Part shown: positions 2 through 59,295 of the stretch, piece by piece
Layout: each line of letters begins with the position of its first letter
Numbering within the stretch: position 1 is the first letter of the stretch
IMG/VR virus record: IMGVR_UViG_3300049215_000771
Span: 310,001 to 374,000 of that record
DNA length: 64,000 nt
Reading direction: 5' to 3' (one strand)
Position numbers and translations under genes: made by a program
The notes under the pieces: model-generated
Told to the model about the DNA's origin: nothing
The model's database searches: none
The model's input: the letters and a program-made list of their open reading frames with translations, nothing else

Positions 2-244
2 ATGAGTAACATCAATGAAGTTTCGCCGCCTGGCTGGGCCGGCACCGTCAAGGCCATGAAGAAACACAAGGACATCGACAATCCTTTCGCCCTTGCGTGG
101 AGCATGAAGAACAAGGGTGACACTGCGCATTATAAGGACAAGAAGAAAGGAAAACCCGAAAAGAAAACCAAATACAAGCATGAAGAAATTGAGAGGAAAA
201 CCTTCAAACAATTCCTCGAAGAAAAGGGCTGGAAGCCTCAGTAA
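2..244 (+). CDS. Lys-rich hypothetical protein (possibly 5'-truncated by window edge) with KTFKQFLEE motif
   Basis: 80-aa ORF at window start; C-terminal KTFKQFLEE resembles the T4 capsid-targeting sequence. Confidence 0.6.
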   Translation: MSNINEVSPPGWAGTVKAMKKHKDIDNPFALAWSMKNKGDTAHYKDKKKGKPEKKTKYKHEEIERKTFKQFLEEKGWKPQ

Positions 245-1287
245 CCAAAAAAATTCGTCCAGTCCGCCCCTGCCTGGTACGGGAACTGGTAGGAAATTGG
301 TTTAGCAAACTTCTTGATGAACCCGTGGACGATAACCGGGCCTTCCTTGACGTACATCTCATTCCAGTCCTTGTAGGGTTTCGGGGGACGTACAACAAAC
401 AACTTGTCCTTGTGCTTGGAAGTCGTCTGCACCAGCGACAAAGCATCACTCATGACCGTAGTTCCTACCTTTCCCGCTTTGTCACGGTCGAGACACAACA
501 CCAACCTGTAGTCCGCCAGCATGATGGCCTGCTTATCATTCATGTTCTTACCACCACACGCAGCAGCGTTCAAGTCAGAAAACGCCAGACTCATGGCGTT
601 GAACTCACCTTCGCACAAATGCACGAGTTCGCCAGCCCTGGGCCACTTGCCTCCCGGCATGTAAATGACATCACCTTTGCCGACCCCTACCTCCTTGGGC
701 GGGCCGAGGTAGCGAATCTTTGCCTGGGGAAAGATATGTCGCCCGTTCCAGTAAATCAACTTCCCGGTCCTGTCGTAATACGGGATGATGATGCGTGACT
801 TGTAGGGGTGTTCCGTGCAGATGTACAAACCCGTTGTCGGAATCTTACGCCCTTCCAGGTACTCTTCCGCCTTCTGCTTCCACCACTTATTCTTCAGTTC
901 GTCGATCAAGTAGGTGCCATAAGGCAGCAACAGATCAGGCGGGGGCGGCTCGACTTCTTCGGGTTGTTGTTTGGCGAAGAACTCTTCCAGGGCCACTTCC
1001 AGGTCACGAACTGTTGGCTCGCCCTTCAAAATGGCGAGAGCGTCTTCACGGTCGCAGTGGTCGATGAGTTGGACGAAGTTGATGAGGCTGCCCTTGCGGT
1101 CAGTCTTGAAGCAGTGGAATACCCCATACTTGCGGCGTTTCTTTCCACCAACAGGTGACAACCATAGATGATGGCCGTCATCGTCCGGCTCGAAGATGCT
1201 GTTGATGCGGATTTCCGTACCTTTCACGATCACGTCGTCGAAGCGTCGTTCTACCCAGCGTCGGAATCGGTCGAAATCTACAGCCAT
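238..1287 (-). CDS. DNA primase (DnaG/TOPRIM)
   Basis: RIIIPYYDRTGKLIYWNGR, TOPRIM CEGEFNAMSL and LCLDRDKAG motifs; start moved to MAVDF (ATG 1287). Confidence 0.88.
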   Translation of the reverse strand: MAVDFDRFRRWVERRFDDVIVKGTEIRINSIFEPDDDGHHLWLSPVGGKKRRKYGVFHCFKTDRKGSLINFVQLIDHCDREDALAILKGEPTVRDLEVALEEFFAKQQPEEVEPPPPDLLLPYGTYLIDELKNKWWKQKAEEYLEGRKIPTTGLYICTEHPYKSRIIIPYYDRTGKLIYWNGRHIFPQAKIRYLGPPKEVGVGKGDVIYMPGGKWPRAGELVHLCEGEFNAMSLAFSDLNAAACGGKNMNDKQAIMLADYRLVLCLDRDKAGKVGTTVMSDALSLVQTTSKHKDKLFVVRPPKPYKDWNEMYVKEGPVIVHGFIKKFAKPISYQFPYQAGADWTNFFGY

Positions 1288-1362
1288 GCTCTGTTCTATA
1301 TATTGGACTGGCTTATCATTGAATATCGGGTTAAAATACCCAACGATATTGGAGACTACACA

Positions 1363-2124
1363 ATGGACATCGAACACATCAGCGTATCACGAAAACAAAC
1401 CTGGGACACCTGCCAGCAACAATATAAATACCGTTACCATTTGAAGATGTACCCGGAAGGCCCACAACCCATCTACCTTTCCTACGGAAAAACCGTCCAC
1501 AAGGTCGCCGAGGAATACGTCCGGGCACAGGGCAAACGCAAAATCGAGGATATTGCCAAGGACGTTCTCTCCGGGCATATTCTACTCGAACATGGCGTTG
1601 CTGCACCACCCCTGGATCGGGAATACAAGAAAAAATTCCCGCAGCACTGCCGGCATATCAAAGAACTGACCGACAAGATCGGCTACGACGGCGAACTGGA
1701 GTACCAGTTCCACTACGACCTGGACCCGCCGCACGGACGCTTCGTCACAGGCTTCATCGACCGTCTCATCGTCCGGGGCGACAAGTATTTCATCCTCGAC
1801 TACAAGACCACCAAGAAAGGCTTCTGGCGCAAGAACTCAAACACCATCAAGAAAGACCTCCAGTTGGCTGCTTACGGTCGGGTTGTACAACGCACATTCA
1901 ATGCGAAGGCTGAAAACATCCGGGCAGCCTTGTTCTATCTGGAAGGAAACGAACTCGTGTCGGTTCGTTTCAACGACGAGATGTTGTTGAAGGCCGAGCA
2001 GGAGTTGTTGCAGGCGCACATCGACATTTCTACAACCAGCCCTGACGACGCCTATGGGCGAGTTGGCGATCACTGCCGCCGTTGTGATTACCGGCAGGTT
2101 TGTCCTTTTTATTCACTGACATGA
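1363..2124 (+). CDS. PD-(D/E)XK RecB/Cas4-like exonuclease
   Basis: SVSR..TWDTC, YGKTVH, GFIDRL, ILDYKT, QLAAY, C-terminal CRRCDYRQVC; GGAGA RBS before ATG 1363. Confidence 0.88.
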   Translation: MDIEHISVSRKQTWDTCQQQYKYRYHLKMYPEGPQPIYLSYGKTVHKVAEEYVRAQGKRKIEDIAKDVLSGHILLEHGVAAPPLDREYKKKFPQHCRHIKELTDKIGYDGELEYQFHYDLDPPHGRFVTGFIDRLIVRGDKYFILDYKTTKKGFWRKNSNTIKKDLQLAAYGRVVQRTFNAKAENIRAALFYLEGNELVSVRFNDEMLLKAEQELLQAHIDISTTSPDDAYGRVGDHCRRCDYRQVCPFYSLT

Positions 2125-2696
2125 TTCGTTGCATAGAAGACTTGAAGCGTCCGCCTCGTGTTGGCACGAAGTACAAAGTGCCATGCGTGTTCGGTAAAAT
2201 CGCCAACATTGGCCCGCATTCCATTCCTCCTGATTGGTGGCCGGTACTTCGTCCGTCCCATCAGGACAGTAAATATGCCCCACGCCATCGCACTGTTTGG
2301 AAGAAAACGGATTGCGGCTACGACGGAGTTGACGAAGTTTACTACGAAGACGATCCAACGACACCCCACCACATGCACGTCGATCCGAGGTTCACCCCGG
2401 AATCAATGTACACACCCTGGGAAATCCACAACCGAAGCTGGCACTCGACCATTGTGGCCGAGTCAGACCTGGAGTGGCGGGTGTTGGTATGTGTCCGCAA
2501 AATGCCGATCCAAAGGCTATTCACTGGTTTTGGCCAACTTTTCATTGAAGATCACAAAGATAAATTCATCAAGTGTGGTCGCTGTCCGCACAAGGGGACT
2601 TTGCTGACATCGTGTCCAAGTGAGCGGGGTGTTGTAACCTGCCCCGCTCACGGACTACGATTCAACAAGAAAACTGGTGCCTGCCTAACAACTTAA
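2100..2696 (-). CDS. Protein with C-terminal Rieske [2Fe-2S]-like domain
   Basis: CPHKG-x13-CPAHGLRFNKKTGAC matches the Rieske CxH...CxxH boxes; N-terminal domain unknown (HHMHVD). Confidence 0.7.
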
Positions 2697-5003: not shown

Positions 5004-5569
5004 TTTGCCCCTATCTTGATCTTGGTTCTGGTGCCTGTTTTCGAGGAAAAGATAAGTTCGGCGGGGCTGAAAGTCTCTCCTTTGAACACTTCTTCGCCGA
5101 CGAACTTATCTGCTTTGCCTTTCTTCACATAAGCGATGGTGACGTGTGGGATGTAGGACGGATAAGCATCGGTAGCCGGCAAGTTGTTGCTCAAAGTCTT
5201 GTGCAGTTTGTGCAACATCTCGCTTTCTACTTCAATCTTCAACACATCAAACTTGTCATTTGACGTGAACAAGGACATCCTCCCAAGCACCACTTCGCCA
5301 GTTCGCTCGTTGTGAAGCACCTTCTCGACCGGGCGATGATCGGAAGAATGCAGCCCATATAACACAGTAATGTGCGGTTCTTCTTCACGACCGAAGGTTG
5401 GGTCGTCCGGGTTTGTGTACAACATGGAATCAGGAACGTGATGGTCGCTCCATTCCAGGATGTTTTGGGCCAATTTATCTGGCAAGTTTACTTGTGTCGA
5501 TGAGTATTGGTATATTACATCATATCCATCAACCAAAAATTGCCTGAATGTTGTCGTCTTCCCCCTCAT
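5000..5569 (-). CDS. 2H phosphoesterase (2'-5' RNA ligase fold; Acb1/T4 gp57B-like)
   Basis: Two HxT motifs: EPHITVLY and YIPHVTIAY. Confidence 0.8.
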   Translation of the reverse strand: MRGKTTTFRQFLVDGYDVIYQYSSTQVNLPDKLAQNILEWSDHHVPDSMLYTNPDDPTFGREEEPHITVLYGLHSSDHRPVEKVLHNERTGEVVLGRMSLFTSNDKFDVLKIEVESEMLHKLHKTLSNNLPATDAYPSYIPHVTIAYVKKGKADKFVGEEVFKGETFSPAELIFSSKTGTRTKIKIGAK

Positions 5570-6829: not shown

Positions 6830-6830
6830 A

Positions 6831-8711: not shown

Positions 8712-8775
8712 ATACCCATCCTTTCTAATTAAGGCCATAATTGGCATGGGTATATAGCCACTTTGGGAGGAAAAC

Positions 8776-20902: not shown

Positions 20903-23470
20903 ATGCCTATTTGGAGTGACTTCTTCAAGTTGTTCACTTATGCCGGCGAGAAAGACCCGCTGGCTAAGAAGAAGGATACACGAAACCTACAAGGTGCCGG
21001 TATCGGTCAACCTGACGTGTATCCAACGCTTGGCGGTGAAGGCCAGGCGGGTGGTGCTGGTGGGGGCCAGGGTCAAGCCCAGCTTCGCCAGTCCTATGAC
21101 ATGATCGACACCACGACTTTGACAAACCGCTCCATGCGGTACAAAGAGTACGAGCGTCTTCGCAACGTCCCGGAAATCGAAATGACCATGACGGTACTGG
21201 CCGATGAAGCCTGTGTAGCAGGCAGTACCCCGATTGCCACACCATTCGGTTTCCAAACCATCGAATCATTGGCTGCCAAGTACAAACCGGAAGAACGCTT
21301 CCTTTGTTACTGCTGGGACAGCCACACTCAAGATTACACGTTAGGCTGGGCCTATCACCCACGCCTAGTCAAAAGAGCGCCAACCGTCACAGTTATACTG
21401 GACGACGGCCACACTTTCACTGTGACCCACGACCACCGCATCATGCGGAAGAATGGTGCCTGGGTTCAGGCTGGCGAGATAGTACGAGGCGATGAATTGA
21501 AGCCTTTCTACCGCCTGCCCGCCAGTTACCGACACACCAAGCAAAAAGCCAAACAATTCCCACGCATCTTCTCCACCAACAAAGGCTGGATCACTGAACG
21601 CCAGTTGTTGGAAGAATGGAAAACCGGCAAGGAAGACCCAAAGCTGGAGAAGGTCAATCGGGCGATGCGCATGATCTGCGGCGGCTTGAACGTCCGTCAG
21701 ATTGCCAGATTGATGGAATATGACTGGCAAACCATTGAGAATTGGCTTCGGGCCGAGGGCTTCTCCCATCGAGAAGTCAAGATTCTATCGAAGCATCGTG
21801 AGTCTCGCCGGGTAGTCGGCGTTCACGAAAGCCCTGAGATGGACGTTTACGATATGTCCGTCGAAGAACACAAGTGTTTTGCCACAGATTGTGTCATCAT
21901 GCACAACTGCCAGAAAGATGAAGAAGGCAACGTATTCAAGGTAATTTGCAGCAGTGCCGCCGCCAAGAAAGAAGTTGAGTTCCTGTTGCGTCATCGGAAC
22001 ATGCTCAACCTGAATCGTTTGTCATGGACCTGGTTCAAGAACTTGTGCATCATGGGCGATTTCTTTGTAGAAACCGTCATCAACCCGGACAGCCCCAAGG
22101 AAGGCATCTACAAGGCCGTGCCACTCCCACCGGAGAGCATGTACCGGATCGAAACAACCAAGGGCAAGCTGATTGAGTTCCAGCAGTCTAAGGAAGGCCC
22201 GGACTACCAGGCTATCGTGCGTGCGCCGATGGTTTCTCAGGCGGGCGAGGCCGAATTGAACCAAAGCATGGCAATTCGCTTTGCCAACAACCAGATCGTA
22301 CACTTCAGGATTGGTGACGACCGCAAAACTTTCTACCCATACGGACAATCCCTCATCGAGCCGGCTCGTAGCCCCGCCCATCAACTGAGGTTGATGGAAG
22401 ATGCTATGGTCGTGTATCGACTTACCCGTGCCCCTGAACGTAGGGTGTTCTATGTGGACGTTGGACAGTTACCTCCGTTCAAGGCTGAAGCCTTCATTGA
22501 AAGGTTGAAGGATCAGTTCAGGAAGCGTAAGATAGCACAGAATAGGGGAGTTCCTGGGGCCAACCAAGTTGAAGAAAGGTGGCAGCCACCCGCCCAGGAC
22601 GAAGATTACTGGTTGCCTATTAGACCGCAAAGCCAGACAAGGATTGAAACGCTTCCGGGTGCGCAGAACCTTGGAGAGATCGACGATGCGATTTACTTCA
22701 GGAACAAGTTGTTTACGGCATTGAACTTCCCAAAAAATTACTTCGCCAACGAAGACCCTGGTGCGACTAGAATTACATTGTCGGCTCAGGATGTGAAGTT
22801 TGCCCGTATGGTGGAGAGGCTTCAAAGCCACTTCGAGGACGGACTGTTGGAATTGGCCGAGAGGCATCTTCAGTTGCGTGGCTACCCGGAGGAAGCCTAC
22901 GAGGATTTGAAGATCAAGATGACCCCACCTTCCGACTGGAGGGAGTTGTCCAGGGCTGAAGTCGTCAACGGACGTTATGGCAATGCGACCACACTCAAGT
23001 CTGGTCAGTTGATGGCTGATTGGGACATCATGGTGAAGATTCTCAAGTTCACGGAAGACGAAGCTGAGGAGATGTTGAGCCGCTTGAAGATTCAGAAGTT
23101 GGAAGACCTGAAGCTACAGGTACTCGCTCAGAACCCACAGTTGTTGGGTATCGGTATTCCTGGACAAGACCCGCAACCCGGACAGGAACTTGGTTCCGAG
23201 CCGGGCGGTCCAAGTCCGAATCCGTCGCCCGATGGCGGCGGTCAGCAGCCGCCTCCCGATCAGGGGGCACCGCCTGCTGCTCCTGGCGGGGACCAACCGC
23301 CTCCAGGTGGCGATCAAGGACCGGCTCCCGCTGGCGCATCGCCTGCTGAGGGAAGTCCGCTACCGGAAGTCGAGCCTGAAGATGTCAAGAAGTTCGATCT
23401 TGAGATTCAGGACTACGAGACAGAGCAGGACGAGGAAGACATCGACCACAGCATAGGTGAAGACAAGTGA
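20903..23470 (+). CDS. gp20: Portal protein (T4 gp20-like), intein-containing, Pro/Gly-rich C-terminal extension
   Basis: RYKEYERL, YGQSLIEPAR, EDAMVVYRLTRAPERRVFYVDVG, EDYWLP, IETLPGAQNL. Confidence 0.93.
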   Translation: MPIWSDFFKLFTYAGEKDPLAKKKDTRNLQGAGIGQPDVYPTLGGEGQAGGAGGGQGQAQLRQSYDMIDTTTLTNRSMRYKEYERLRNVPEIEMTMTVLADEACVAGSTPIATPFGFQTIESLAAKYKPEERFLCYCWDSHTQDYTLGWAYHPRLVKRAPTVTVILDDGHTFTVTHDHRIMRKNGAWVQAGEIVRGDELKPFYRLPASYRHTKQKAKQFPRIFSTNKGWITERQLLEEWKTGKEDPKLEKVNRAMRMICGGLNVRQIARLMEYDWQTIENWLRAEGFSHREVKILSKHRESRRVVGVHESPEMDVYDMSVEEHKCFATDCVIMHNCQKDEEGNVFKVICSSAAAKKEVEFLLRHRNMLNLNRLSWTWFKNLCIMGDFFVETVINPDSPKEGIYKAVPLPPESMYRIETTKGKLIEFQQSKEGPDYQAIVRAPMVSQAGEAELNQSMAIRFANNQIVHFRIGDDRKTFYPYGQSLIEPARSPAHQLRLMEDAMVVYRLTRAPERRVFYVDVGQLPPFKAEAFIERLKDQFRKRKIAQNRGVPGANQVEERWQPPAQDEDYWLPIRPQSQTRIETLPGAQNLGEIDDAIYFRNKLFTALNFPKNYFANEDPGATRITLSAQDVKFARMVERLQSHFEDGLLELAERHLQLRGYPEEAYEDLKIKMTPPSDWRELSRAEVVNGRYGNATTLKSGQLMADWDIMVKILKFTEDEAEEMLSRLKIQKLEDLKLQVLAQNPQLLGIGIPGQDPQPGQELGSEPGGPSPNPSPDGGGQQPPPDQGAPPAAPGGDQPPPGGDQGPAPAGASPAEGSPLPEVEPEDVKKFDLEIQDYETEQDEEDIDHSIGEDK
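21212..21907 (+). mobile_element. Intein (232 aa) in portal, with internal HTH and no recognisable endonuclease
   Basis: A|CVAGST block A; VTHDHRIM block B; VYDMSV block F; IMHN|C terminus. Confidence 0.88.
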
Positions 23471-24738: not shown

Positions 24739-25083
24739 TCAAGTGTTAGGCATTTCTCCGTGCGCCGAGTCCGCACTGTTCGGAACTACCACGTCACCAT
24801 CACCATGATCGAACCCATGACCGAAGGACGCTCCCATGCGTGGCTTCTTCTTGCTGGGCTTCGGGTGGGCGTTCTTGTGATTCATCTTGTCCAGTTCGAT
24901 CTGAATGTCCGGGTCTTGTTTGGCAAGACGTTGTAGAAACGAGACTACTTCGGAGTGATATTTCTCGGCGGCGTGCTGAAGCGCCTTCATGATACCACTT
25001 TCTTCCCCATCCTTGTCGTCGGCCTGATCGACATCCAGAAAGCTATTTTCCTTCAAACCTACGAACTGACTGAATGTTTTCAT
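24739..25083 (-). CDS. Small protein with MKTFSQF leader
   Basis: GAGGG RBS, TACATAG upstream. Confidence 0.65.
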   Translation of the reverse strand: MKTFSQFVGLKENSFLDVDQADDKDGEESGIMKALQHAAEKYHSEVVSFLQRLAKQDPDIQIELDKMNHKNAHPKPSKKKPRMGASFGHGFDHGDGDVVVPNSADSAHGEMPNT

Positions 25084-25257: not shown

Positions 25258-27207
25258 ATGAAAAGAAAACTCATCAGCTTCGATGTCTTCAAGAAGATCG
25301 AGGAAGGCTCAATTTCCACCGCCCAGCACGAGTTGGCCGGTGCGGAAGAAGTGTTGTCCAAGACCTTGGGCGTCGATGAACTGAGGCTGCACTGCTTTGG
25401 AGAATCGGATGTAACTTACCAGAGCTTGGACGGCAGCTTCGTTCATGCAAATTACAAGATCAACAAGAACCAGCTTGTACTTGAGAACATCGAGTCGTTG
25501 GTCATTGAGGAAGAAACCGAGAAGAAGAAAGCTCGTGACGTACTCACCAGCATGGTGGAATCCCTGCTGGACAACAACGAAGCTAAGGCATCCGAACAAT
25601 TCGAGAATTACCTTTCTTTGCCCGTCGTTCGCCGGGATTTGATCGTTTCTGAAGCCTTTGATGTTTCAGTATCCAAACCATCTGGCAAACATTCTTCCCT
25701 GTACGGCAAGAAACAAGATCGTGGCCTAGTTGCCAAGCGTATCCGTGAGATGAAGAAGACCAAGAAGAAGCTAACTGCTGCTCCAAGTCTTCGTGCATCC
25801 GTCGCCAAGAAACGTGCCAACGCCGCCAAGAAGCTCGGCGGGGCCAACAATCCACGGTGGCGCACTTACGCCCGCAAGGTGAAGCCGACAACCATGAAGG
25901 AATGGTCGGTGATGTGCGAACACATCATGGACTACCTGGATTACAAAGAATTCGGCCCAACCATCAAGGAATCCCTCGTTCAGAACGATGAGAAGGGTAA
26001 TGTCGTAGCGGTCGCCATGCCGACTATCCAGAAGCGTAACGAAGGCAAGATTTTGTCCTTCAACTGGAAGACTTTGGATCACGAAGTAAAAACCCAGCGA
26101 GCCAAGATCAAGCGGCTTGCCGAGGACACGAACTTCTGCAAGGCGATGGCCGATCTGAAGCGTTACAACAACATTTCCGACAATACAGCACTTGAAGAAA
26201 CGCTGGAGAAGATTGTCTCCATGTGGCCTGATGTTTTGTATCTGACTCAGACCGAGTTGGCAGAACAGATCGGCGCTGCTTTGGAAACTGCGGCTGTCAA
26301 GAATTACGACGACCAGACCTGTGAGTTCATGGCGGAAGGCATCTTGAGGATGGCTCACCACGCCTACACGGATCGGGTTCGCAAGATTTCCAGCATGGCT
26401 GGCGTTTCCCCGGAAGCAACTACCGAAAGCACTGAGGAGAAGGACGCTTACGCCAACTTCGCCAAGGTGTGTGCCGACTTCTACCCACAGTTGGACGAGT
26501 CGGATCAGGCCGAGTTGAGGGTTTTTGCTGATCTCTACAAGGCTTTGCACGAAGTCTTCCGCATTGCATCTGAAACTGGCGATGAAGCTACTCGTAGTGA
26601 GGTTGCCAGCTACTTGAACAATTGCGAAGCGATCTTGAACCGTGAAAGCCAGCCAGATTTGAGTCTGGCCGAAACAATTGCCAATTATTTGTACGACCTG
26701 GCGGAAGCCAATGTGGAAGGGGCCAAGGACACTTGGGACGTTTCCAACAGTGACGTTCACACCACGGTCAGCGGCGATCACCCACGCATGTCTTGGGCTG
26801 CGAAGGTAACAAATGCTGTTCCTTCCAACTTCCCAGGCGATTGGGGCGGCAAGGCTCCAGTTTCGGACGGCAAGAGCTACCGCAATGGCCTCGAAGACGA
26901 AATGAGGAGCCGTTCGTGGAGCCAGTACGCCAGCGGTGAAACTTACCCGGATTTGAAGAACCCATATGTTCCGAAGTCTCCGTGGGATGTTGGCAATTAC
27001 AAGATGAAGGGTGAGGAAAGCGCTGCAACCGCTGGAACAAGCGATTGGAGCCGTTGGCAGTCGAAAGATACCTGGCCAAACCTCCAGAATCCATACGTTC
27101 CTGACTCGCCTTGGGATAAGAGCAAGTACAAGGCCACCATCGACAAGGGCAACCTGGTTGTGGACAAGGGCGAGACGAAGCAGGGCAGCGTAAAAAACCA
27201 CTTCTAA
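25258..27207 (+). CDS. Putative prohead core/internal head protein with C-terminal PxLxNPYVP repeats
   Basis: Position between portal and protease (T4 gp67/68 locus); helical and charged; GGGAG RBS. Confidence 0.6.
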   Translation: MKRKLISFDVFKKIEEGSISTAQHELAGAEEVLSKTLGVDELRLHCFGESDVTYQSLDGSFVHANYKINKNQLVLENIESLVIEEETEKKKARDVLTSMVESLLDNNEAKASEQFENYLSLPVVRRDLIVSEAFDVSVSKPSGKHSSLYGKKQDRGLVAKRIREMKKTKKKLTAAPSLRASVAKKRANAAKKLGGANNPRWRTYARKVKPTTMKEWSVMCEHIMDYLDYKEFGPTIKESLVQNDEKGNVVAVAMPTIQKRNEGKILSFNWKTLDHEVKTQRAKIKRLAEDTNFCKAMADLKRYNNISDNTALEETLEKIVSMWPDVLYLTQTELAEQIGAALETAAVKNYDDQTCEFMAEGILRMAHHAYTDRVRKISSMAGVSPEATTESTEEKDAYANFAKVCADFYPQLDESDQAELRVFADLYKALHEVFRIASETGDEATRSEVASYLNNCEAILNRESQPDLSLAETIANYLYDLAEANVEGAKDTWDVSNSDVHTTVSGDHPRMSWAAKVTNAVPSNFPGDWGGKAPVSDGKSYRNGLEDEMRSRSWSQYASGETYPDLKNPYVPKSPWDVGNYKMKGEESAATAGTSDWSRWQSKDTWPNLQNPYVPDSPWDKSKYKATIDKGNLVVDKGETKQGSVKNHF

Positions 27208-27219: not shown

Positions 27220-27906
27220 ATGAACAAAGAAGAGTTGCAACTACTCATTGAATGTTGCTCAGTTCCCGGCTGCTACATGGAAATGAATCTGCACGAGTCA
27301 TCTGACAGGAAGTCGGGATTGACTAGGTTCAGGGGAAAATTTCAGGAAGCCGAGGCTGTCAACAAAAACAAACGGATGTACCCACACGCCGTCCTTGACG
27401 AAAACGTGAAGAAATTACAAGAAGTGGTTTCTGCGAAAGGTCTGGTAGGCGAGTTGGACCACCCAACGGACAGCATCATCCATTTTGAGAAGGCGTCCCA
27501 CGTCGTCACTAGATTGTGGTGGGAAGGCAACAACTTGATGGGTGAAGGCGAGATACTACCTACGCCATGTGGTGAGATTCTAAACGCTCTCATTAAAAGC
27601 GGCGTGCGAGTCGGTATCAGCAGTAGGGGAGTCGGCAGTGGAAAAGTTGATGAGAATGGAATTCTCGTCATCAGTGATAGCTACAAGCTAATCACTTTCG
27701 ACGCCGTGGCCGATCCTAGCACCTTCAACGCTTTTCAGGCGAAGATAGGTGGAAAGAGCGAAACTTACATTCCCACTCAAAATACCAGAAGTGCTGCGAA
27801 AAACGAAAGTAGCAGCATACATAAGGTAAATAAGGACGCACTAATTGCTTGTTTGGGTGGGATCATCACTAAGGAAACTAGCACAATCAAAGCGAGGTTA
27901 GGCTAA
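27220..27906 (+). CDS. gp21: Prohead protease (T4 gp21-like)
   Basis: NKNKRMYP, GELDHP, SHVV, TPCG, GISSRGVGS, FDAVADPS. Confidence 0.95.
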   Translation: MNKEELQLLIECCSVPGCYMEMNLHESSDRKSGLTRFRGKFQEAEAVNKNKRMYPHAVLDENVKKLQEVVSAKGLVGELDHPTDSIIHFEKASHVVTRLWWEGNNLMGEGEILPTPCGEILNALIKSGVRVGISSRGVGSGKVDENGILVISDSYKLITFDAVADPSTFNAFQAKIGGKSETYIPTQNTRSAAKNESSSIHKVNKDALIACLGGIITKETSTIKARLG

Positions 27907-28842: not shown

Positions 28843-30279
28843 ATGAACGCAAATTCCAAATTCCTGAACGAAGCTAGAGAGTTGGAAGGTCGTTGGGGCA
28901 AGACTGGCCTCTTGGAAGGCATTGAAGATCGCTACATCCGATCCGCCACCGCCGTTCTGCTTGAAAACCAGCGCCTCATGAACGAAGTTTCGACCGACAC
29001 TGGCGACATCGCTCAGTTCAAGCGTATCAGCATCCCGTTGGTACGTCGTATTTACCCGCAGCTAATTGCTAACAAGATTGTATCTGTTCAGCCATTGCTC
29101 GGCCCAACAGGTTTGGTGTACTACCTGCGCTTCCGGTACTCGTCCAACAAGGGCGCTACTCGTGGAGCGGACAACAACGGCGGCTTCCCGGCTGACGATG
29201 TGAACACCCTCATGCAGTTGGCTGATGGTACTGCCAACTTGGACATTTTCTACACGCACCAGTTCGTGCAGAACGAGTCCACCAGCACCGACAACGGTGG
29301 CAACGTCACTTCGGCGTACAGCCCGTTGGAACACACCCCGATCCTGGCCGGCACCATCACGGGCACGATCTATGACGGCTCCCTCGCAGTGCAGACCTTC
29401 GTGGTTTCCTCGACCGGAACCTTCACCTTCTCCAACATCGGTAGCCCAGCTACCTACGTCACCGCTGGTTCTTTGAACCTGACGACTGGCGAGTTGGTGT
29501 TGACTTGGAACTCGGCCCCAGGCCCGAACCACGCTGTACTTTCCTACGAGTACAACATGGAATGTCAACAAGATTTGCCGGAAATCAACTTGGTCATTGA
29601 GTCGGAAGAAATTGCCGCCAAGACCCGCAAGTTGAAGGCTGTATGGTCCTACGAAGCGCAGCAGGACTTGCGCTCGCAGCACAACCTCGACGCCGAGGCT
29701 GAGTTGACGGCTGTATTGGCCCAGGAAATCAACCTCGAAATCGACCGTGAAGTGTTGACGGACCTCCGTAACAACAGCGGTACGGTAGCGGCATGGGATT
29801 TCAACACGGCATTGGGCGAAACCATCAAGGAGAAGTATGAGTCGCTGTATGTGAAGGTTGTTGAAATCAGCAACGTCATCCACAGGAAGACTCTTCGTGG
29901 TGGTGCAAACTGGATGGTAACTTCCCCTGAAGTTGCTTCCATCTTCGAGACGGCAACCGCTGGTTTCGCACCGGCTCCATCTGAGACGTTCACTTCGTCG
30001 CTGGGTATCCAGTACGTCGGAACCGTCAACAACAGGTGGCGGTTGTACAAAGACCCGTTGTTCCCATCGAACCAGATTCTCATGGGGTACAAGGGTGATT
30101 CTTACATGGATTCGGGTTACTTCTATTGCCCCTACGTCCCGCTCACGCAGACGCCTGTGGTTTTGGACCCTGAGTCCTTCTGTCCGAGGAAGGGTATCCT
30201 TACACGTTACGGGAAGAAACTGTTGCGTGAAGGGGCCAAGTTCTACGCCAGGATGTCCATCGCCAACTTCGTCATCTAA
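28843..30279 (+). CDS. gp23: Major capsid protein (T4 gp23-like)
   Basis: LLENQ, IPLVRR, VQPLLGPTGLVYYLR, RKLKAVWS.E..QDL, LDAEAEL, YCPYVPL, GILTRYG. Confidence 0.97.
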   Translation: MNANSKFLNEARELEGRWGKTGLLEGIEDRYIRSATAVLLENQRLMNEVSTDTGDIAQFKRISIPLVRRIYPQLIANKIVSVQPLLGPTGLVYYLRFRYSSNKGATRGADNNGGFPADDVNTLMQLADGTANLDIFYTHQFVQNESTSTDNGGNVTSAYSPLEHTPILAGTITGTIYDGSLAVQTFVVSSTGTFTFSNIGSPATYVTAGSLNLTTGELVLTWNSAPGPNHAVLSYEYNMECQQDLPEINLVIESEEIAAKTRKLKAVWSYEAQQDLRSQHNLDAEAELTAVLAQEINLEIDREVLTDLRNNSGTVAAWDFNTALGETIKEKYESLYVKVVEISNVIHRKTLRGGANWMVTSPEVASIFETATAGFAPAPSETFTSSLGIQYVGTVNNRWRLYKDPLFPSNQILMGYKGDSYMDSGYFYCPYVPLTQTPVVLDPESFCPRKGILTRYGKKLLREGAKFYARMSIANFVI

Positions 30280-32044: not shown

Positions 32045-32055
32045 TACATATCTGC

Positions 32056-32229
32056 ATGAAGAAAAAGAAGAAAGGCGATCTAAAAACAGTGTTCGATGAC
32101 GAAGGCGAGCCTGTCGTCGTCGCAATGCCGAAAGGCAATTCACAGAAGAAAGAAAGCATCGAATCAAAAGTGAAAACATTCAAGGGGTGGCTGTTGGACA
32201 ACCACCCCTTGGATGAAGCTCTTACTTGA
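32056..32229 (+). CDS. Small Lys-rich protein with KTFKGWLLD motif
   Basis: Short ORF carrying the recurring motif. Confidence 0.45.
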   Translation: MKKKKKGDLKTVFDDEGEPVVVAMPKGNSQKKESIESKVKTFKGWLLDNHPLDEALT

Positions 32230-36462: not shown

Positions 36463-37012
36463 AATGCTTTTCGGCTTTCTTGATGACTTCCTTGGCGACG
36501 GCTTTGGGGTCTTTCTCCTCAGCGCCGATGCCAAGGATTCGCATTTTGTTGGTGATTTCAACACTGTGAACATCTAGGTTGTCGATCAGCAACCACTTCC
36601 TGCCAGCCAGGTGATACTTCTCAGCAAGTTCGCCTGGCTTTGTTTCTTTGGCGCTGTGCATTCCCTTGACGTATTTCGACCAGCCCAACACTTCAACGAC
36701 TTTCTCAACGTAGTCGATGCGGCTGTGGCTCAAGATGATGAAATCGGCGAACTTGGAAATGGCTTTGACGAGGTTGGTCGCTCCGGGTCGTGGAAACAAG
36801 TACATATCCTGATCTTCGGCATGGATCAGGCGCACATCCGGGTAGGGCTTCTTGTTTGGAACGATCATTTTGGCAAATTCTTTGTTCTGTGGATGGTCCT
36901 TCAGCCAGCCAATTTCCATATTGTGAACGAGGGTTTCGTCCAGATCGGAGAACACGGCGGGGCGTCCACTTTCATTTTGTTCAAGCCAAAGGCCAAATTG
37001 CATGAGGTTCAT
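36338..37012 (-). CDS. HAD-superfamily NIF/FCP1-like phosphatase
   Basis: SDLDETL (DxDxT), RPGA..L, LLIDN. Confidence 0.8.
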   Translation of the reverse strand: MNLMQFGLWLEQNESGRPAVFSDLDETLVHNMEIGWLKDHPQNKEFAKMIVPNKKPYPDVRLIHAEDQDMYLFPRPGATNLVKAISKFADFIILSHSRIDYVEKVVEVLGWSKYVKGMHSAKETKPGELAEKYHLAGRKWLLIDNLDVHSVEITNKMRILGIGAEEKDPKAVAKEVIKKAEKHFIDVCDWVPTVHEYDDYELWRVLPKVKEMLGLDWTKGDPYF

Positions 37013-37047
37013 CGCAAGGTATTTATCGCTGCACCGTATATATTTGC

Positions 37048-37809
37048 ATGGTGAGTCTCGATGGTTTCACAGAGTATGTCTTCAACGAGAGCGTTGAAGT
37101 AATTGATGCAAAGAAGCAAGTCCGTGATATTCTCAAGCAAAAGCGGGCCACAAACAGGAAAGGTCTTCTTATTTGTTTCGAGGGTATCGACGGAGTAGGC
37201 AAAACTACGCAGGTTGACAAATTGATGGATTACCTGGACGGTAAGGGATACGAAGTCATCCACACCAAATGGAACTCTTCCCCCTTGCTCAAAAAACCCA
37301 TCAAGAAAGCCAAAGAAAAACATATGCTCACGCCGATCTTGTACTCGCTGCTGCACGCTGCCGACATGGTGGTGAGGTACGAGAACGAGATCGTGCCGGC
37401 CTTGAACGCCAACAAGATCGTAGTTTCCGATAGATATATCTATACATCTATGGCTCGTGACTCGGCGAGGGGCGTTGACACGGGCATCTTAGAGAAAATA
37501 TACGCCGATATTCGCCAGCCGGATATTTTGTTCCATTGCGTATTGCCCATCCATCGAGCCTTCCATCGCCTCGTCAAAGAAAAAGACCTGACCTACTACG
37601 GCGTCGGCATGGATTTGAACCTTGCGGACAACATGGAAGACAGCTACATTAAATACGAGAACCTGGTAGACAAGGCTTACCGGCGCATCCTGCCGAAAGT
37701 CACCAGCTACGTCAAACTCGACATGGGCAAAAGCATTGAAGAAATTGCCCTGGAAGTCGAGCGTGTTGTCAAAGAAAAAACAGGCATCGGCAAGTACAAG
37801 AAGGATTGA
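37048..37809 (+). CDS. tmk: Thymidylate kinase
   Basis: FEGIDGVGKTTQ, SDRYIYTS.A, PDILF. Confidence 0.9.
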   Translation: MVSLDGFTEYVFNESVEVIDAKKQVRDILKQKRATNRKGLLICFEGIDGVGKTTQVDKLMDYLDGKGYEVIHTKWNSSPLLKKPIKKAKEKHMLTPILYSLLHAADMVVRYENEIVPALNANKIVVSDRYIYTSMARDSARGVDTGILEKIYADIRQPDILFHCVLPIHRAFHRLVKEKDLTYYGVGMDLNLADNMEDSYIKYENLVDKAYRRILPKVTSYVKLDMGKSIEEIALEVERVVKEKTGIGKYKKD

Positions 37810-42531: not shown

Positions 42532-42565
42532 GAACACAGCCGGGAGTAAAATCCCGGCTGTGTTC
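42532..42565. terminator. 14-bp stem hairpin after 41805 gene
   Basis: gaacacagccggga-gtaaaa-tcccggctgtgttc; no U tract. Confidence 0.55.
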
Positions 42566-42579
42566 GTCTACATACCTAC

Positions 42580-42822
42580 ATGAAGACATTTCTCGAATGG
42601 CTGAAATTACGAGAAGAAGGCGGCTTGTTCGGCAACCCAGGCACACCCTATCCCGATGGCTTGACGCCCACCACTTCTAAGAAACTTGGCCCCAACAAAG
42701 GCAAACTCGACAATTCCGGCATGAGCGGCGGTCCTGGTCGCAAAAGTGCTGGTGGAATGCCTGCGGCTGGTGGTGCGCCCATTCCTCCCGCTGGTGGAAA
42801 TACCCCTGCACCACCTAAATAG
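42580..42822 (+). CDS. Small Gly/Pro-rich protein with MKTFLEWLKLREE leader
   Basis: Leader motif. Confidence 0.7.
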   Translation: MKTFLEWLKLREEGGLFGNPGTPYPDGLTPTTSKKLGPNKGKLDNSGMSGGPGRKSAGGMPAAGGAPIPPAGGNTPAPPK

Positions 42823-42826: not shown

Positions 42827-43429
42827 ATGATTAGTTTCAGGACATGGCTTGAAGAACATGATGATTTTGAGGCAGAAGCCGGACCCCACATCAAAGTGCT
42901 GCTGCCGAGCGTTAAACAAAGCAGCAACTACGACTGCGGTGCTGCTGCGCTTCGTGCCATAGCGGAATACTTCAAAGTCGGCCCTGAGAAGGAAGCCGAC
43001 TTCATCAAGGCTTGTAAAACCACCAAGAAGGACGGCACCGACCCGGATGGCATCATCAGGGCGGCTCATGCCTTCGGCCTCAACACCAGGGCCAAGGCGG
43101 GGATGTCCATTGAGGAATTGAAATCCTTCCTAGACATGGGCAGGCCCATCATGTGTCTGATTCAAGCCTACGGCGAGCCAGACGAGTACCACAAGCCACA
43201 AAGCGGGCACTACGTCAATGCCATCGGTTACGACGGCAATCACATCTATTTTGAAGACCCGTCAATGAAAGGCAACCGTGGGATGTTGCCTTTCAAGGAA
43301 TTCAAGAAACGCTGGCATGACAAAGGCGAGGGAGGCAAAAGCTACACCCGCTGGGGCGTCGTCATCTGGAAGCAGTCCGACGAAGGAACTGATCGAGAAT
43401 ACGTTCCCCAGGCGAAGAAGATTCCATGA
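42827..43429 (+). CDS. C39-like cysteine peptidase with MISFRTWLEE leader
   Basis: VKQ...DCGAAAL, GRPI, GHYV..IGYD...Y..DP. Confidence 0.85.
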   Translation: MISFRTWLEEHDDFEAEAGPHIKVLLPSVKQSSNYDCGAAALRAIAEYFKVGPEKEADFIKACKTTKKDGTDPDGIIRAAHAFGLNTRAKAGMSIEELKSFLDMGRPIMCLIQAYGEPDEYHKPQSGHYVNAIGYDGNHIYFEDPSMKGNRGMLPFKEFKKRWHDKGEGGKSYTRWGVVIWKQSDEGTDREYVPQAKKIP

Positions 43430-48513: not shown

Positions 48514-49046
48514 CCCTCCAATAGACCGGCGTGGTCGAGCGATTGTACCAATTTGATTAGGTGCTTGCACATTCCCGGCATTTCCAGCGGGTTTGCCGGT
48601 GGTCCTCCCGCAGCTTCGTACCTTCTTCGCTTGCTTCCGTACAGCGACCGATCCAGGTGGTCATAGTAATTGAATCTCCACCTGAAATCAGCGCAGTCAC
48701 ATCTCAACAGTACGTCGTTTTCTGCATAGCTCAATCGTTCAAGCACATAATGCAATCCATCACTGGCTACAATCTCGACCCAATCCTGATGCTCCTTCTC
48801 AGGATGGTAGCGGACTTGTTTGAACAATACCATCGGCTGGTACACTTTCCCTGACTCACCACTCTCAGCAGTGCCCTTGATGAACAAAGTTTTCACGCCA
48901 ACGAACGGAGTCCAAGATAGCTCCACAATCTTCACAGGGTCTATGGCATGTTGCCTTTTTGTTGTGCGAGGAAACGCTGCCACCGTACTCTGGTAAAGAT
49001 CATTGAGAGAGGATTCGTCCAAGTGCATCCAGTCGATGAACCGCAT
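48510..49046 (-). CDS. SWIM zinc-finger protein with MRFIDW leader
   Basis: RCDCADF...CKHL. Confidence 0.7.
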   Translation of the reverse strand: MRFIDWMHLDESSLNDLYQSTVAAFPRTTKRQHAIDPVKIVELSWTPFVGVKTLFIKGTAESGESGKVYQPMVLFKQVRYHPEKEHQDWVEIVASDGLHYVLERLSYAENDVLLRCDCADFRWRFNYYDHLDRSLYGSKRRRYEAAGGPPANPLEMPGMCKHLIKLVQSLDHAGLLEG

Positions 49047-49089
49047 GAAGATATGTATCCCAGGTAACTACAATACTGGTAGGAGGAGT

Positions 49090-55873: not shown

Positions 55874-55894
55874 ACAAGTATATAGGTGAACCAT

Positions 55895-56999: not shown

Positions 57000-57030
57000 C
57001 AGAAATCCATTCCTAAAGACTACATAGTTC

Positions 57031-57258
57031 ATGCGACTATCCTTCAAGGATTGGCTTCATGAGGCAGATTCTTTCTCGAATACACCAGATGGTGCGGGAG
57101 AGATATGGGATAACAATTCCAACGCCGACCGTGGCTTCGGGCGCTCAGGTGCGAAAAGCAAAAACGTGAGCAAAGGAGTCACACCGGAACGAGCGGATTT
57201 CGACCCGGACGAGCTATACCTTGGCAAACAGCAGAAGAAGGGCTGCAAAAAGAAGTAA
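57031..57258 (+). CDS. Small protein with MRLSFKDWLHE leader
   Basis: TACATAG 3 nt upstream. Confidence 0.7.
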   Translation: MRLSFKDWLHEADSFSNTPDGAGEIWDNNSNADRGFGRSGAKSKNVSKGVTPERADFDPDELYLGKQQKKGCKKK

Positions 57259-57275
57259 GCAGCATAAGGAGATAA

Positions 57276-58160: not shown

Positions 58161-58181
58161 CCTCTAGCCAAAGGTGGTGGA

Positions 58182-58544
58182 ATGGCCGTGTCGTTTCAAA
58201 AACTATGGGAAAGCATGGAGTCCGCCCGCAAGGGCGGACACCACCTTGATGACAAGGCGATGGAAGCCATTCGCAACGGTATCAACGTCCGGGAGGATTT
58301 TTGGGAAGACTTTATGTTAGTCATCAACAACTCCGGGGCGATGTCGGTATTGCTCGATGTGCCGGTCACTAAAATCGGCGCTTGGCATCAAAGGGTGAAA
58401 GAAGCACTGGACAAGGTGAAAGCCGCTGACACGGTGCCGGACCCGAAAGACAAAAGCAACCTGATGAAAACAGGAATGCCGAAAGAAGATGACGAAACCG
58501 ATCCGAAGGTTACTGTCCTCAATCAAATGGGTGGAGAAGAATGA
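58182..58544 (+). CDS. Hypothetical protein (MAVSFQKLWE leader)
   Basis: Operon position. Confidence 0.65.
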   Translation: MAVSFQKLWESMESARKGGHHLDDKAMEAIRNGINVREDFWEDFMLVINNSGAMSVLLDVPVTKIGAWHQRVKEALDKVKAADTVPDPKDKSNLMKTGMPKEDDETDPKVTVLNQMGGEE

Positions 58545-58915
58545 AATCGCTATGTGAATGGCGTCTCGCCAACTCCGACCCGGATTGGGAGAAAGTAAAA
58601 AGTACATGGGGTGGTGGAAAGAAGACTCTCGATCCGAATCTCGTCAACAAGATGAGAGTCAAGATCGAAGGAATCAAGGAATGGTTTGTGCGTGAACTTG
58701 GAGAGCCAAAAATCACCAGCTTCCGTGACGTTCCGCCCAACATGCGTGATTCCTTGGCTCAAGCTATCGTGGCGGCAACGATGAAAGTCTTCTACACAGA
58801 AGGTGGGGATGTGCCGGGCATGGCAACCATCGACCAGACAAAAAGTCAACAACCAAATGTTCCAGCCCCGCAACCACAAAATCAAACAAGCGCACCAGCG
58901 GGATGGAAGGGATAA
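58541..58915 (+). CDS. Hypothetical protein (MKSLCEWRL leader)
   Basis: ATGA coupling. Confidence 0.65.
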   Translation: MKSLCEWRLANSDPDWEKVKSTWGGGKKTLDPNLVNKMRVKIEGIKEWFVRELGEPKITSFRDVPPNMRDSLAQAIVAATMKVFYTEGGDVPGMATIDQTKSQQPNVPAPQPQNQTSAPAGWKG

Positions 58916-59295
58916 TGATGAGAAAGTTTCACGAATGGGTTAATCTGCGTCTTCGAGAAGATGGTACTGTTCCAGGCACTCCACAGATGAGTCCTGGCGG
59001 AAATACACCAATGCCTTTGGGACACGCTCACGGCGATCCAAATCCTGGTTCTGGAGGCGCTGGGGCTGCGGGTGGGCCTCCACAAAACAACCAGGGCCAA
59101 AGTGGTAGCGAAGACGAATCCGTACTTACTGGCAATTTGGAACGCCACTTCAATATGCTCATGACCGATCTTAGCAAACTCAACAGAATGAACAAGGCGA
59201 AAGCCGGCGAGATTTTGAATCACATCATGCAGGCCATGTCGCAACTCGGCGTACAAAAAAACGTCGCAACTAACGCCGTTAAACAAAACTTCTAA
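58915..59295 (+). CDS. Hypothetical Gly/Pro-rich protein (MMRKFHEWV leader)
   Basis: TAATG coupling. Confidence 0.65.
   Translation: MMRKFHEWVNLRLREDGTVPGTPQMSPGGNTPMPLGHAHGDPNPGSGGAGAAGGPPQNNQGQSGSEDESVLTGNLERHFNMLMTDLSKLNRMNKAKAGEILNHIMQAMSQLGVQKNVATNAVKQNF

What the first reader, a model, noticed from the sequence alone, without database searches (positions are those of the whole stretch)
2..59295. T4 capsid-targeting-like leader on about 15 proteins, including enzymes
Seen: M-[KR/IS]-[TS]-F/Y-x-[EQD]-[FW]-[LV]-x(1-4)-E-type segments in 5000 (TFRQFLVD), 5885 (SFAKYLE), 18970 (SYREWRLRE), 24739 (KTFSQF), 36338 (QFGLWLE), 37048 (GFTEYVFNE), 42580 (KTFLEWLKLRE), 42827 (SFRTWLEE), 48510 (RFIDWMHLDE), 50667 (RSFAQH), 57031 (SFKDWLHE), 58182, 58541 and 58915, plus near the C-terminus in 2..244 (KTFKQFLEE) and 32056 (KTFKGWLLD). 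Established: the T4 internal-protein CTS (MKTYQEFIAE) directs packaging and is removed by gp21 after Glu. Inference: the virion may carry and inject an enzyme kit (2H phosphoesterase, Tmk, NIF/HAD phosphatase, C39 peptidase, SWIM protein) that acts before phage transcription starts.
Basis: partly seen in the sequence, partly recalled or inferred. Interest (0 to 1): 0.8.

Follow-up and report, generated by a model that had tools for sequence, protein, structure and literature searches.

The report
T4-type capsid-targeting leaders, huge phage
A roughly 530-kb uncultivated phage with T4-like head genes puts a short tag, almost identical to the T4 signal that loads proteins into the capsid for injection, on about ten unrelated proteins in this window, so its injected protein set can probably be read from sequence.

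Summary
A model trained only on relatives gives nine top hits in the window's 85 proteins. Seven start at residues 2-6 (genes at 42580, 24739, 57031, 42827, 58915, 5000, 36338). Two lie near C-termini (2..244, 32056). Eight N-termini score at least 6 bits, against 0.13 in shuffles. 48510 and 37048 are supported by orthologues. 5885 and 18970 are borderline. 50667, 58182 and 58541 are unsupported.

The window comes from a 532,729-bp viral contig with a T4-type head module: gp20 portal, S77 gp21-like protease and gp23 capsid protein. The leader (M-K-T-F-x-E/Q-W/F-L, often then L/I/F-x-E) matches T4 IPI (MKTFKEF) and IPII/III (MKTYQEFIAE). Its two near-invariant aromatics sit at residues 4 and 7, the mapped T4 targeting determinants. 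Residue 8 and the Glu match the processing determinants.

A 595-kb relative has 35 or more such genes. Their products are unusually basic. In the C39 peptidase family F and W are as conserved as the catalytic Cys, and nine homologues lack the leader altogether.

Best reading is capsid targeting with frequent protease removal (0.72). Packaging, cleavage and injection are inferred, not shown. It is a new variant of a known kind.

The parts
42580..42615 (+). Leader MKTFLEWLKLRE|EGGLF of an 80-aa basic, Gly/Pro-rich protein (gene 42580-42822). A TACATA box starts 11 nt before the ATG and there is no SD.
   Evidence: Best N-terminal hit of the independent HMM (13.3 bits, 16.9). Orthologues keep it: LR756511 (V)KTFREFLQVREGGGL and L130 MTFKEWLRFSEEGGG. 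Mature pI is 9.9.
25048..25083 (-). Leader MKTFSQFVGLKE|NSF of a 114-aa protein (gene 24739-25083) encoded inside the head module, between the portal and the protease operon.
   Evidence: Scores. In 13 diverged orthologues the leader M-K-[TS]-F-x-x-[FY]-[IVL]-x-[LVM]-[KR]-E is the best-conserved part, together with a C-terminal DVVxPNxADS motif.
42827..42856 (+). Leader MISFRTWLEE|HDD of a C39-family cysteine peptidase (gene 42827-43429).
   Evidence: The Pfam C39 domain starts at residue 27. 44 of 53 homologues carry the leader, with F 44/44 and W 41/44. Nine start directly at the domain. AF2 gives a helix at 4-10, a low-pLDDT linker and a confident domain from about residue 21.
57031..57063 (+). 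Leader MRLSFKDWLHE|ADS of a 75-aa protein (gene 57031-57258). A TACATA box starts 10 nt before the ATG.
58915..58959 (+). Leader MMRKFHEWVNLRLRE|DGT of a 126-aa Gly/Pro-rich protein (gene 58915-59295).
   Evidence: 8.0 bits.
5531..5569 (-). Leader-like MRGKTTTFRQFLV of a 2H/Acb1-like phosphoesterase (gene 5000-5569). Moderate support.
   Evidence: 7.7 bits. Pfam 2_5_RNA_ligase2 at 4.6e-11 and Acb1 at 2e-8. The orthologue MMTTTTYRPFTDKG is only partly conserved.
36980..37012 (-). Leader MNLMQFGLWLE(QNE|S) of a NIF/HAD-type phosphatase (gene 36338-37012). Moderate support.
   Evidence: 7.7 bits. The NIF domain starts at residue 22. The LR756511 HAD protein starts MNLNFRQYVEG.
49014..49046 (-). 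Leader MRFIDWMHLDE|SSLNDLY of a 178-aa protein (gene 48510-49046). A TACATA box starts 11 nt before the ATG.
   Evidence: Low score (3.5 bits) because F is at residue 3. Orthologues keep F-x-x-W-[LMI]...[LN]-x-E|SSLNDLY despite length changes (LR756511, L130).
37048..37089 (+). Weak leader-like MVSLDGFTEYVFNE|S on thymidylate kinase (gene 37048-37809), which has a 43-aa extension before the kinase domain.
   Evidence: The Pfam Thymidylate_kin domain starts at residue 44. 3.2 bits. The L130 orthologue reads MVSLQGFTEYVLKE|N.
197..220 (+). The same motif, KTFKQFLE, near the C-terminus (residues 66-76 of 80) of a very basic protein (gene 2-244).
   Evidence: Top hit of both independent models. 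The LR756511 counterpart also has SNFADFVAQRD near its C-terminus.
32173..32217 (+). The same motif, KTFKGWLLDNHPLDE|ALT, near the C-terminus (residues 40-54 of 57) of the small protein 32056-32229.
   Evidence: It resembles the N-terminus of LR756511 415543 (MKTFAEWIVEKHPLDEG). The gene has a TACATA box 11 nt before its ATG.
27220..27906 (+). Prohead protease, a T4 gp21 homologue (Peptidase_S77) and the presumed leader-removing enzyme.
   Evidence: Pfam 2.1e-28. 35% identity to T4 gp21, with GELDHP and GISSRGVGS conserved and the N-terminal QLLIE (T4 'LIE-9' site) conserved (PMC9026906).
27906..28805 (+). Glu-rich 299-aa protein in the gp22 (scaffold) position. Presumed scaffolding core and candidate docking partner.
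   Evidence: Assigned by position and composition only. BLASTP against T4 gp22 gives E=2.6. Conserved in 80 of 80 related loci.
28843..30279 (+). Major capsid protein (Gp23 family), with a candidate maturation site RLMNE|VSTDTG.
   Evidence: Pfam 6.6e-86. In the alignment the site falls in the same columns as the T4 gp24 N-terminal ...LLRE|S sequence.
20903..23470 (+). Portal protein (T4 gp20 family) interrupted by an intein.
   Evidence: Pfam Portal_T4 at 6.7e-75. The Intein_splicing match (residues 157-335) scores 33.7 bits, just under its 35.8-bit cutoff.
25258..27207 (+). Conserved 649-aa protein in the gp67/gp68 position. Its N-terminus is MKRKLISFDVFKKIEE. Possible prohead core component.
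   Evidence: Present in 71 of 80 related loci. The N-terminus is conserved in LR756511. No family hit.

Best explanation
The leaders are the huge-phage version of the T4 capsid-targeting sequence.

Proposed mechanism: a 7-12-residue amphipathic helix (M-K-T-F-x-E/Q-W/F-L...) docks the protein onto the scaffolding core while the prohead assembles. The key contacts are the aromatics at residues 4 and 7. In many cargos the gp21-type S77 protease then cuts after a Glu in a hydrophobic-x-E motif, most often 6 or 8 residues after the first aromatic. This leaves the mostly small and basic mature protein, or an enzyme, trapped with the DNA and available for ejection into the next host.

Shown here: the motif, its confinement to protein termini, its conservation and modularity, the T4-type head genes, and the in-register match to the T4 determinants.

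Inferred: docking, cleavage, presence in virions, and injection.
For: 1. Position-specific enrichment with a model trained on other genomes.
2. T4 sequences read from NC_000866: IPI MKTFKEF..., IPII/III MKTYQEFIAE|A. 66 of 85 leaders have aromatics at exactly residues 4 and 7, and 62 also have L/I/V/M at 8. T4 suppressor mapping puts targeting at residues 4 and 7 and processing at 8 and 10 (PMC9026906).
3. The commonest Glu position is F+6, as in T4 I-A-E|A. The commonest following residue is Ala, then Asn.
4. The head module is T4-type, with an S77 protease 35% identical to gp21 and a conserved QLLIE.
5. Modularity: enzyme domains start 17-43 residues downstream. In the C39 family F is 44/44 and W 41/44, the linker is variable, and 9 homologues have no leader. 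AF2 shows a detached helix.
6. LR756511 has 35-43 such genes, and all 43 six-frame hits fall in called genes. Their mature parts are basic, with median pI 8.5 against 6.1, p=6e-7. T4 IPs are likewise 'highly basic' (PMC8442874).
7. One leader protein is encoded inside the head module, and its leader is the conserved part.
8. An IMG/VR scan for MKTFxEWL[DE] found 26 stretches where I estimate (not computed) under one by chance. Many are on 140-570-kb contigs, and neighbouring genes also carry leaders.
Against: - No virion proteomics or any experiment exists for this clade.
- The leader HMM ranks T4 IPI first in 32 kb of T4 but at only 8.1 bits, and IPII/III at about 1 bit. The match to T4 is therefore one of pattern and register, not a strong profile hit.
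- Only 51-72% of leaders have a hydrophobic-x-E within residues 5-18, against 25-28% background. In some C39 homologues the leader abuts the domain with no plausible site, so cleavage cannot be universal.
- The scaffold candidate shows no detectable similarity to gp22.
- Another huge phage with a gp23-type capsid protein (LR756508, 150 kb scanned) has none.
- Packaging a thymidylate kinase has no obvious rationale.
- C-terminal copies have no direct T4 CTS precedent. T4 only has C-terminal propeptides on gp21 and Alt.
Confidence: 0.72

Rival explanations
1. The motif is a short linear docking peptide for some other shared partner, such as a phage chaperone, a hub protein, a compartment or secretion receptor, or a degradation adaptor. 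It would then have nothing to do with the capsid.
For: - It occurs at C-termini as well as N-termini.
- Many leaders lack an obvious cleavage site.
- Cargos include ordinary-looking cytoplasmic enzymes: Tmk, a PolyA_pol/CCA-type enzyme and HAD.
- LR756508, which also has a gp23-type capsid protein, lacks the motif in the 150 kb scanned.
Against: - The residue-by-residue register matches the T4 CTS, including the mapped determinants.
- It co-occurs with a gp21-type protease.
- One carrier is encoded inside the head module.
- The carriers are basic.
Confidence: 0.17
2. The conserved N-terminus reflects a translation or RNA-level requirement of leaderless mRNAs, because many of these genes have a TA[N]ATA box ending about 5 nt before the ATG and no Shine-Dalgarno sequence.
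For: In LR756511 21 of 35 leader genes have the proximal box, against 62 of 922 other genes (odds ratio 21, p=4e-15). The window genes 42580, 48510, 57031, 32056 and 37048 have the box at -10 or -11.
Against: - The leader DNA is not conserved, and different codons encode the same residues.
- The conserved residues are F, W and L at i, i+3 and i+4, which is a helix face and not a codon bias.
- Leader genes with a normal SD exist (24739, 58915, 18970).
- The same peptide occurs near C-termini.
- Leaderless-type genes without the peptide also exist.
Confidence: 0.05
3. The leaders are double-glycine-type export or processing leaders cut by the phage C39 peptidase, whose gene (42827) lies directly after 42580.
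For: A C39 'double-glycine peptidase' is conserved in the clade. Some leaders are followed by GG: 42580 REEGG, 18970 RESGG, LR756511 123745 KEMGG.
Against: - GG within residues 9-30 occurs in only 11 of 85 leaders, against 8% of other proteins.
- By my reading of the canonical leader (from memory, not run), the hydrophobic register of double-glycine leaders at -4, -7 and -12 is not met.
- No ABC exporter domain is attached.
- The peptidase itself carries the leader.
Confidence: 0.03
4. The pattern is a chance or compositional artefact of N-termini.
For: The generic M-K-T/S start is common in bacteria.
Against: Shuffle and internal-window controls, six-frame controls, and conservation across orthologues at 35-90% identity.
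Confidence: 0.01

Closest known systems
T4 and T-even capsid-targeting sequence (CTS) of internal proteins IPI, IPII, IPIII and the polymorphic Ip family (Mullaney & Black 1996, as cited in PMC9026906; PMC12373910)
   Same: - An N-terminal tag of about 10-20 residues, M-K-T-[YF]-x-E-F/W-[IL].
- Aromatics at residues 4 and 7, a hydrophobic residue at 8, and Glu at or near 10, often followed by Ala.
- Shared by otherwise unrelated, mostly small and basic proteins.
- The genome encodes a gp21-type protease, a gp20 portal and a gp23 capsid protein.
   Different: - Trp is preferred at residue 7, and the distance to the Glu varies (+5, +6 or +8).
- About ten carriers lie in 64 kb, and 35 to roughly 55 in a 595-kb relative, against three in T4.
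- Carriers include recognisable enzymes: C39 peptidase, HAD/NIF, 2H esterases, and in the relative NADAR and a PolyA_pol/CCA-type enzyme.
- Copies also occur near C-termini.
- The genes are scattered and often have a TA[N]ATA box immediately before the ATG. T4 ip genes have an SD instead.
- The profile similarity to IPII/III is weak.
Propeptides of phiKZ, 201phi2-1 and SPN3US inner-head and ejection proteins, processed by gp21-related proteases (PMC5694885, PMC9026906)
   Same: Giant phages with a gp21-type protease that cuts after Glu. Many internal proteins are thought to be targeted by N-terminal propeptides.
   Different: Those propeptides are mostly over 100 residues long and share no short consensus. 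Here the tag is short and has a consensus, as in T4.
Double-glycine leaders processed by C39 peptidases
   Same: Short N-terminal leaders on diverse small peptides, with a C39 peptidase present in the genome.
   Different: There is no GG requirement, no exporter, and a different register.

Membership tests
T4-type capsid-targeting sequence (CTS) | A short (about 10-20 aa) tag at the extreme N-terminus, shared by otherwise unrelated proteins | tested here: met
   Seven of the 9 top HMM hits start at residues 2-6. Carriers have unrelated Pfam domains or none. Two extra copies lie near C-termini, which is outside the classical definition.
T4-type capsid-targeting sequence (CTS) | Targeting determinants at residues 4 and 7 (Tyr/Phe4 and Phe7 in IPIII/IPI) | tested here: met
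   Aromatics at exactly residues 4 and 7 in 66 of 85 leaders. F 44/44 and W 41/44 in the C39 family.
T4-type capsid-targeting sequence (CTS) | Processing determinants: a hydrophobic residue at 8 and Glu at 10, a gp21 site of the L/I-x-E type | tested here: inconclusive
   L/I/V/M at residue 8 in 62 of 66. Glu exactly at 10 in 15, and at 9, 10 or 12 in 53. Hydrophobic-x-E occurs within residues 5-18 in 51-72% of leaders, against 25-28% background. Some leaders have no candidate site.
T4-type capsid-targeting sequence (CTS) | The genome encodes a gp21-type (S77) prohead protease and a T4-type prohead (gp20, gp23, scaffold core) | tested here: met
   Pfam Peptidase_S77, Portal_T4 and Gp23. 35% identity to gp21 with conserved motifs. 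The scaffold is assigned by position only, with no similarity to gp22.
T4-type capsid-targeting sequence (CTS) | Significant sequence or profile similarity to the T4 CTS itself | tested here: inconclusive
   T4 IPI ranks first of 282 ORF starts in 32 kb of T4, but at 8.1 bits. IPII/III score about 1 bit. LR756511 37675 begins MKTFKEF, identical to the first 7 residues of IPI.
T4-type capsid-targeting sequence (CTS) | Carrier proteins are present in virions with the tag removed, and the tag suffices to package a foreign protein | not testable with these tools
   This needs virion mass spectrometry and fusion experiments. No cultured member of the clade was found.
Double-glycine leader / C39 system | The leader ends in GG (or GA/GS) at the cut site | tested here: not met
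   GG within residues 9-30 in 11 of 85 leaders, against 78 of 927 other proteins.

The most novel reading that the evidence does not exclude
A whole clade of 0.5-0.9-Mb uncultivated phages uses a conserved terminal tag that works at either end of a protein. The tag loads about 4-6% of the phages' gene products into the capsid. The load includes counter-defence-type enzymes: 2H/Acb1-like esterases, NADAR, RNA-repair-type HAD and nucleotidyltransferase, and a C39 protease. New cargo would be recruited through a portable cassette of promoter box, leaderless ATG and tag. If so, the injected proteome of hundreds of uncultured huge phages could be read directly from sequence.
Probability: 0.4. Interest if true: 0.85.

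Novelty: new variant of a known kind. Interest (0 to 1): 0.66.

Why it matters
In T-even phages the CTS marks injected anti-restriction proteins. It is also the basis of T4 protein-delivery engineering.

Finding the same tag in register in very distant huge phages with T4-type head genes has three consequences:
- The targeting mechanism would be ancient.
- There would be a sequence-only way to list candidate injected proteins, probably first-strike counter-defence factors, in phages that cannot be cultured.
- The cargo would extend from small inhibitors to enzymes.

The tight link with a promoter-like box directly at the ATG also hints at how new cargo genes are recruited.

Tried and rejected
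- Megablast of 20 kb of the window against the phage collection found nothing. There are no tRNAs in the window.
- My first codon-score gene caller mis-called several genes and printed a long upstream string by mistake. It was replaced and curated by hand.
- The first PSSM, from LR756511 only with small pseudocounts, was too harsh: Tmk, 18970 and T4 IPII/III scored low. I replaced it with an HMM trained on 75 leaders from LR756511 and IMG/VR.
- BLASTP of the scaffold candidate against T4 gp22 showed no similarity.
- A search for a T4 gp55 late-sigma homologue in LR756511 and the window, to date the TA[N]ATA boxes, found nothing. The temporal class of the leader genes stays unknown.
- Intersecting the contigs of the leader-pattern hits with the contigs of capsid-protein relatives failed. 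The 80-locus list was saturated by relatives at or above 83% identity.
- The double-glycine idea was tested and rejected.
- The literature search found no paper containing MKTF-type leaders outside T4. The library holds only open-access papers, so earlier reports in subscription journals cannot be excluded.

Full report
**What the window is.** The capsid gene of the window is 100% identical to IMG/VR contig IMGVR_UViG_3300049215_000771, which is 532,729 bp long. The nearest GenBank record is the 595,163-bp uncultured phage LR756511.1. Its capsid protein is 81% identical, and most other proteins are 30-60% identical.

The window carries a T4-type head module:
- TerL at 6831-8711 (-).
- A gp20-family portal at 20903-23470 that contains an intein.
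- A conserved 649-aa ORF at 25258-27207.
- A Peptidase_S77 (gp21-type) protease at 27220-27906.
- A Glu-rich, scaffold-like ORF at 27906-28805.
- A Gp23-family capsid protein at 28843-30279.

The protease is 35% identical to T4 gp21. It keeps the GELxHP and G(I/V)SSRGxGS blocks and the N-terminal QLLIE. That N-terminal sequence is the 'LIE-9' site noted for gp21 in PMC9026906.

A reader-style pattern starts within the first 10 residues 12 times, against 1.3 expected, but that pattern was chosen after seeing the data. I therefore trained a model only on other genomes. It uses 75 leaders from LR756511 and from IMG/VR loci, with the initiator Met excluded.
- On the window's 85 proteins the nine best hits are seven N-terminal ones (42580, 24739, 57031, 42827, 58915, 5000, 36338) and two near C-termini (2..244 and 32056). 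Noise begins after that.
- Eight N-termini score at least 6 bits. Shuffled N-termini average 0.13 and internal windows 0.36.
- In a six-frame scan, all hits of at least 6 bits are gene starts.
- The DNA encoding the leaders is not conserved, so selection acts on the peptide.

48510 and the Tmk gene 37048 are rescued by orthologue conservation. 5885 and 18970 are borderline. 50667, 58182 and 58541 are not supported.

**Relatives.**
- LR756511 has 35 genes with a strong leader and 43 at a looser cut. All 43 six-frame hits fall in called genes. Many further sub-threshold cases appear among genes that share the same upstream box.
- A degenerate DNA pattern for MKTFxEWL[DE] found 26 IMG/VR stretches, where I estimate (not computed) under one match by chance. 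Many lie on contigs of 140-570 kb, and neighbouring genes carry non-identical leaders. About half of these loci share genes with LR756511 or the window.
- Another huge phage with a gp23-type capsid protein, LR756508, has none in the 150 kb scanned.
- A Kyanoviridae genome has one clear case (MKTFKEFLEES, 17.1 bits), two more at 6-8 bits and weaker candidates below that. In T4, IPI ranks first.
- The tag is therefore shared across some branches of T4-like phages and is strongly amplified in this clade.

**Comparison with the T4 CTS.** Sequences were read from NC_000866: IPI is MKTFKEFTST..., and IPII and IPIII are MKTYQEFIAE|A. PMC9026906 summarises the amber-suppressor mapping. Targeting depends mainly on residues 4 and 7, and processing on residues 8 and 10.

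Among 85 leaders from the window, LR756511 and IMG/VR:
- 66 have aromatics at exactly residues 4 and 7.
- 62 of those also have L/I/V/M at residue 8.
- 53 have Glu at residue 9, 10 or 12.

The commonest Glu position is six residues after the first aromatic, which is the T4 register. The commonest residue after it is Ala, then Asn. The capsid protein has a candidate site, RLMNE|VSTDTG, in the same alignment columns as the T4 gp24 N-terminal ...LLRE|S sequence.

The profile itself matches IPII/III only weakly. The likeness is one of pattern and register.

**Modularity and selection.**
- Enzyme domains begin after the leader: C39 at residue 27, NIF at 22, Tmk at 44, and the 2H matched stretch at 53, at profile position 15.
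- Of 53 C39 homologues at 35-90% identity, 44 carry the leader. F is invariant (44/44), W is 41/44, and the linker varies in length. Nine begin directly at the domain.
- AF2 models residues 4-10 as a helix of low confidence, then a disordered linker, then a confident fold from about residue 21.
- The 114-aa protein encoded within the head module keeps the leader as its most conserved part across 13 diverged orthologues.
- Leader-bearing proteins of LR756511 are markedly basic once the first 12 residues are removed: median pI 8.5 against 6.1, p=6e-7. T4 IPs are likewise described as highly basic (PMC8442874).
- Pfam hits among the 35 LR756511 carriers are few: PolyA_pol, NADAR, HAD_SAK_1, C39, tRNA_lig_CPD, DUF5661 and a KOW domain. 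The Toprim and DnaG zinc-ribbon hits probably belong to a false positive.

**Mechanism proposed.** The helix docks cargo onto the prohead core. The S77 protease removes it in many cases. The cargo stays with the DNA and is ejected on infection. Only the sequence-level steps are shown here.

Points against or open:
- Not all leaders have a site.
- The scaffold candidate is not detectably related to gp22.
- C-terminal copies have only an indirect T4 precedent, namely the C-terminal propeptides of gp21 and Alt.
- There are no experimental data for this clade.

**Rivals.**
- A docking tag for some other shared partner cannot be excluded (0.17).
- A translation or leaderless-mRNA explanation is unlikely because codons vary, C-terminal copies exist, and SD-bearing leader genes exist. 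It is worth noting that 21 of 35 leader genes in LR756511 have a TA[N]ATA box 9-15 nt before the ATG, against 62 of 922 others. The window shows the same arrangement.
- The double-glycine/C39 idea fails on GG frequency.

**Novelty.** CTS-tagged internal proteins are established for T-even phages (PMC12373910; PMC9026906). Giant phiKZ-like phages use long propeptides without a consensus (PMC5694885). I found no open-access paper that mentions this leader in huge phages. I rate it a new variant of a known kind. It has a far larger cargo set, enzymatic cargo, copies at either terminus, and a promoter-proximal arrangement.

Noticed in passing
window, e.g. 42564-42579, 57016-57030, 49047-49062, 32040-32055, 37032-37047, 25174-25200, 8712-8775: A promoter-like TA[TC]ATA box is strongly enriched upstream of genes (TATATA before 16 of 85 genes against 0.8 expected). 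On several leader genes it starts 10-11 nt before the ATG with no Shine-Dalgarno, which suggests leaderless mRNAs. In LR756511 21 of 35 leader genes have such a box against 62 of 922 others (p=4e-15). Some boxes read TATAAATA, like T4 late promoters, but no gp55 homologue was found.
   Followed up: partly
window 20903-23470 (+): The gp20-type portal gene appears interrupted by an intein. The Pfam Intein_splicing match (residues 157-335) scores 33.7 bits, just under its 35.8-bit cutoff, and weak sub-threshold HTH matches lie at residues 248-284. The Portal_T4 domain resumes at residue 366.
   Followed up: no
L130 (ENA ERZ25039540 contig_19076, 914450-933350): A close, syntenic relative (C39 protein 90% identical) sits on a 933,350-bp contig. 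That would be larger than the largest published phage genome I recall (about 735 kb, from memory) if it is a single non-redundant genome rather than a concatemer or mis-assembly. Its Tmk gene is split by an intein/LAGLIDADG insertion (607 aa).
   Followed up: no
window 24739-25083 (-): Besides the leader, this head-module protein family has a conserved C-terminal motif, D-V-V-x-P-N-x-A-D-S-x-x-G, of unknown role.
   Followed up: no
window 25258-27207 (+): A 649-aa ORF with no family match occupies the gp67/gp68 position and is conserved in 71 of 80 related loci. Its N-terminus, MKRKLISFDVFKKIEE, is conserved in LR756511 and loosely resembles the leader pattern (F-x-x-F...I-E-E).
   Followed up: partly
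window 5000-5569 (-): The 2H phosphoesterase also matches Pfam Acb1 (anti-CBASS, 2e-8). In T4 the ORF next to ipI (57B, annotated RNA ligase) is, from memory, the Acb1 gene.
   Followed up: no
window 45734-46306 (-): This is a likely LAGLIDADG homing endonuclease, since its orthologue in L130 has PF03161. It has a TATATA box 22 nt upstream.
   Followed up: no
LR756511 248220-248951, 474464-474877, 544812-545360: Further copies of the motif lie at or near C-termini or at internal positions in the relative (KKFRDYLEDKS*, HSFKEWLSQRI*, KGFKEWLEENH). The tag is therefore not strictly N-terminal.
   Followed up: partly
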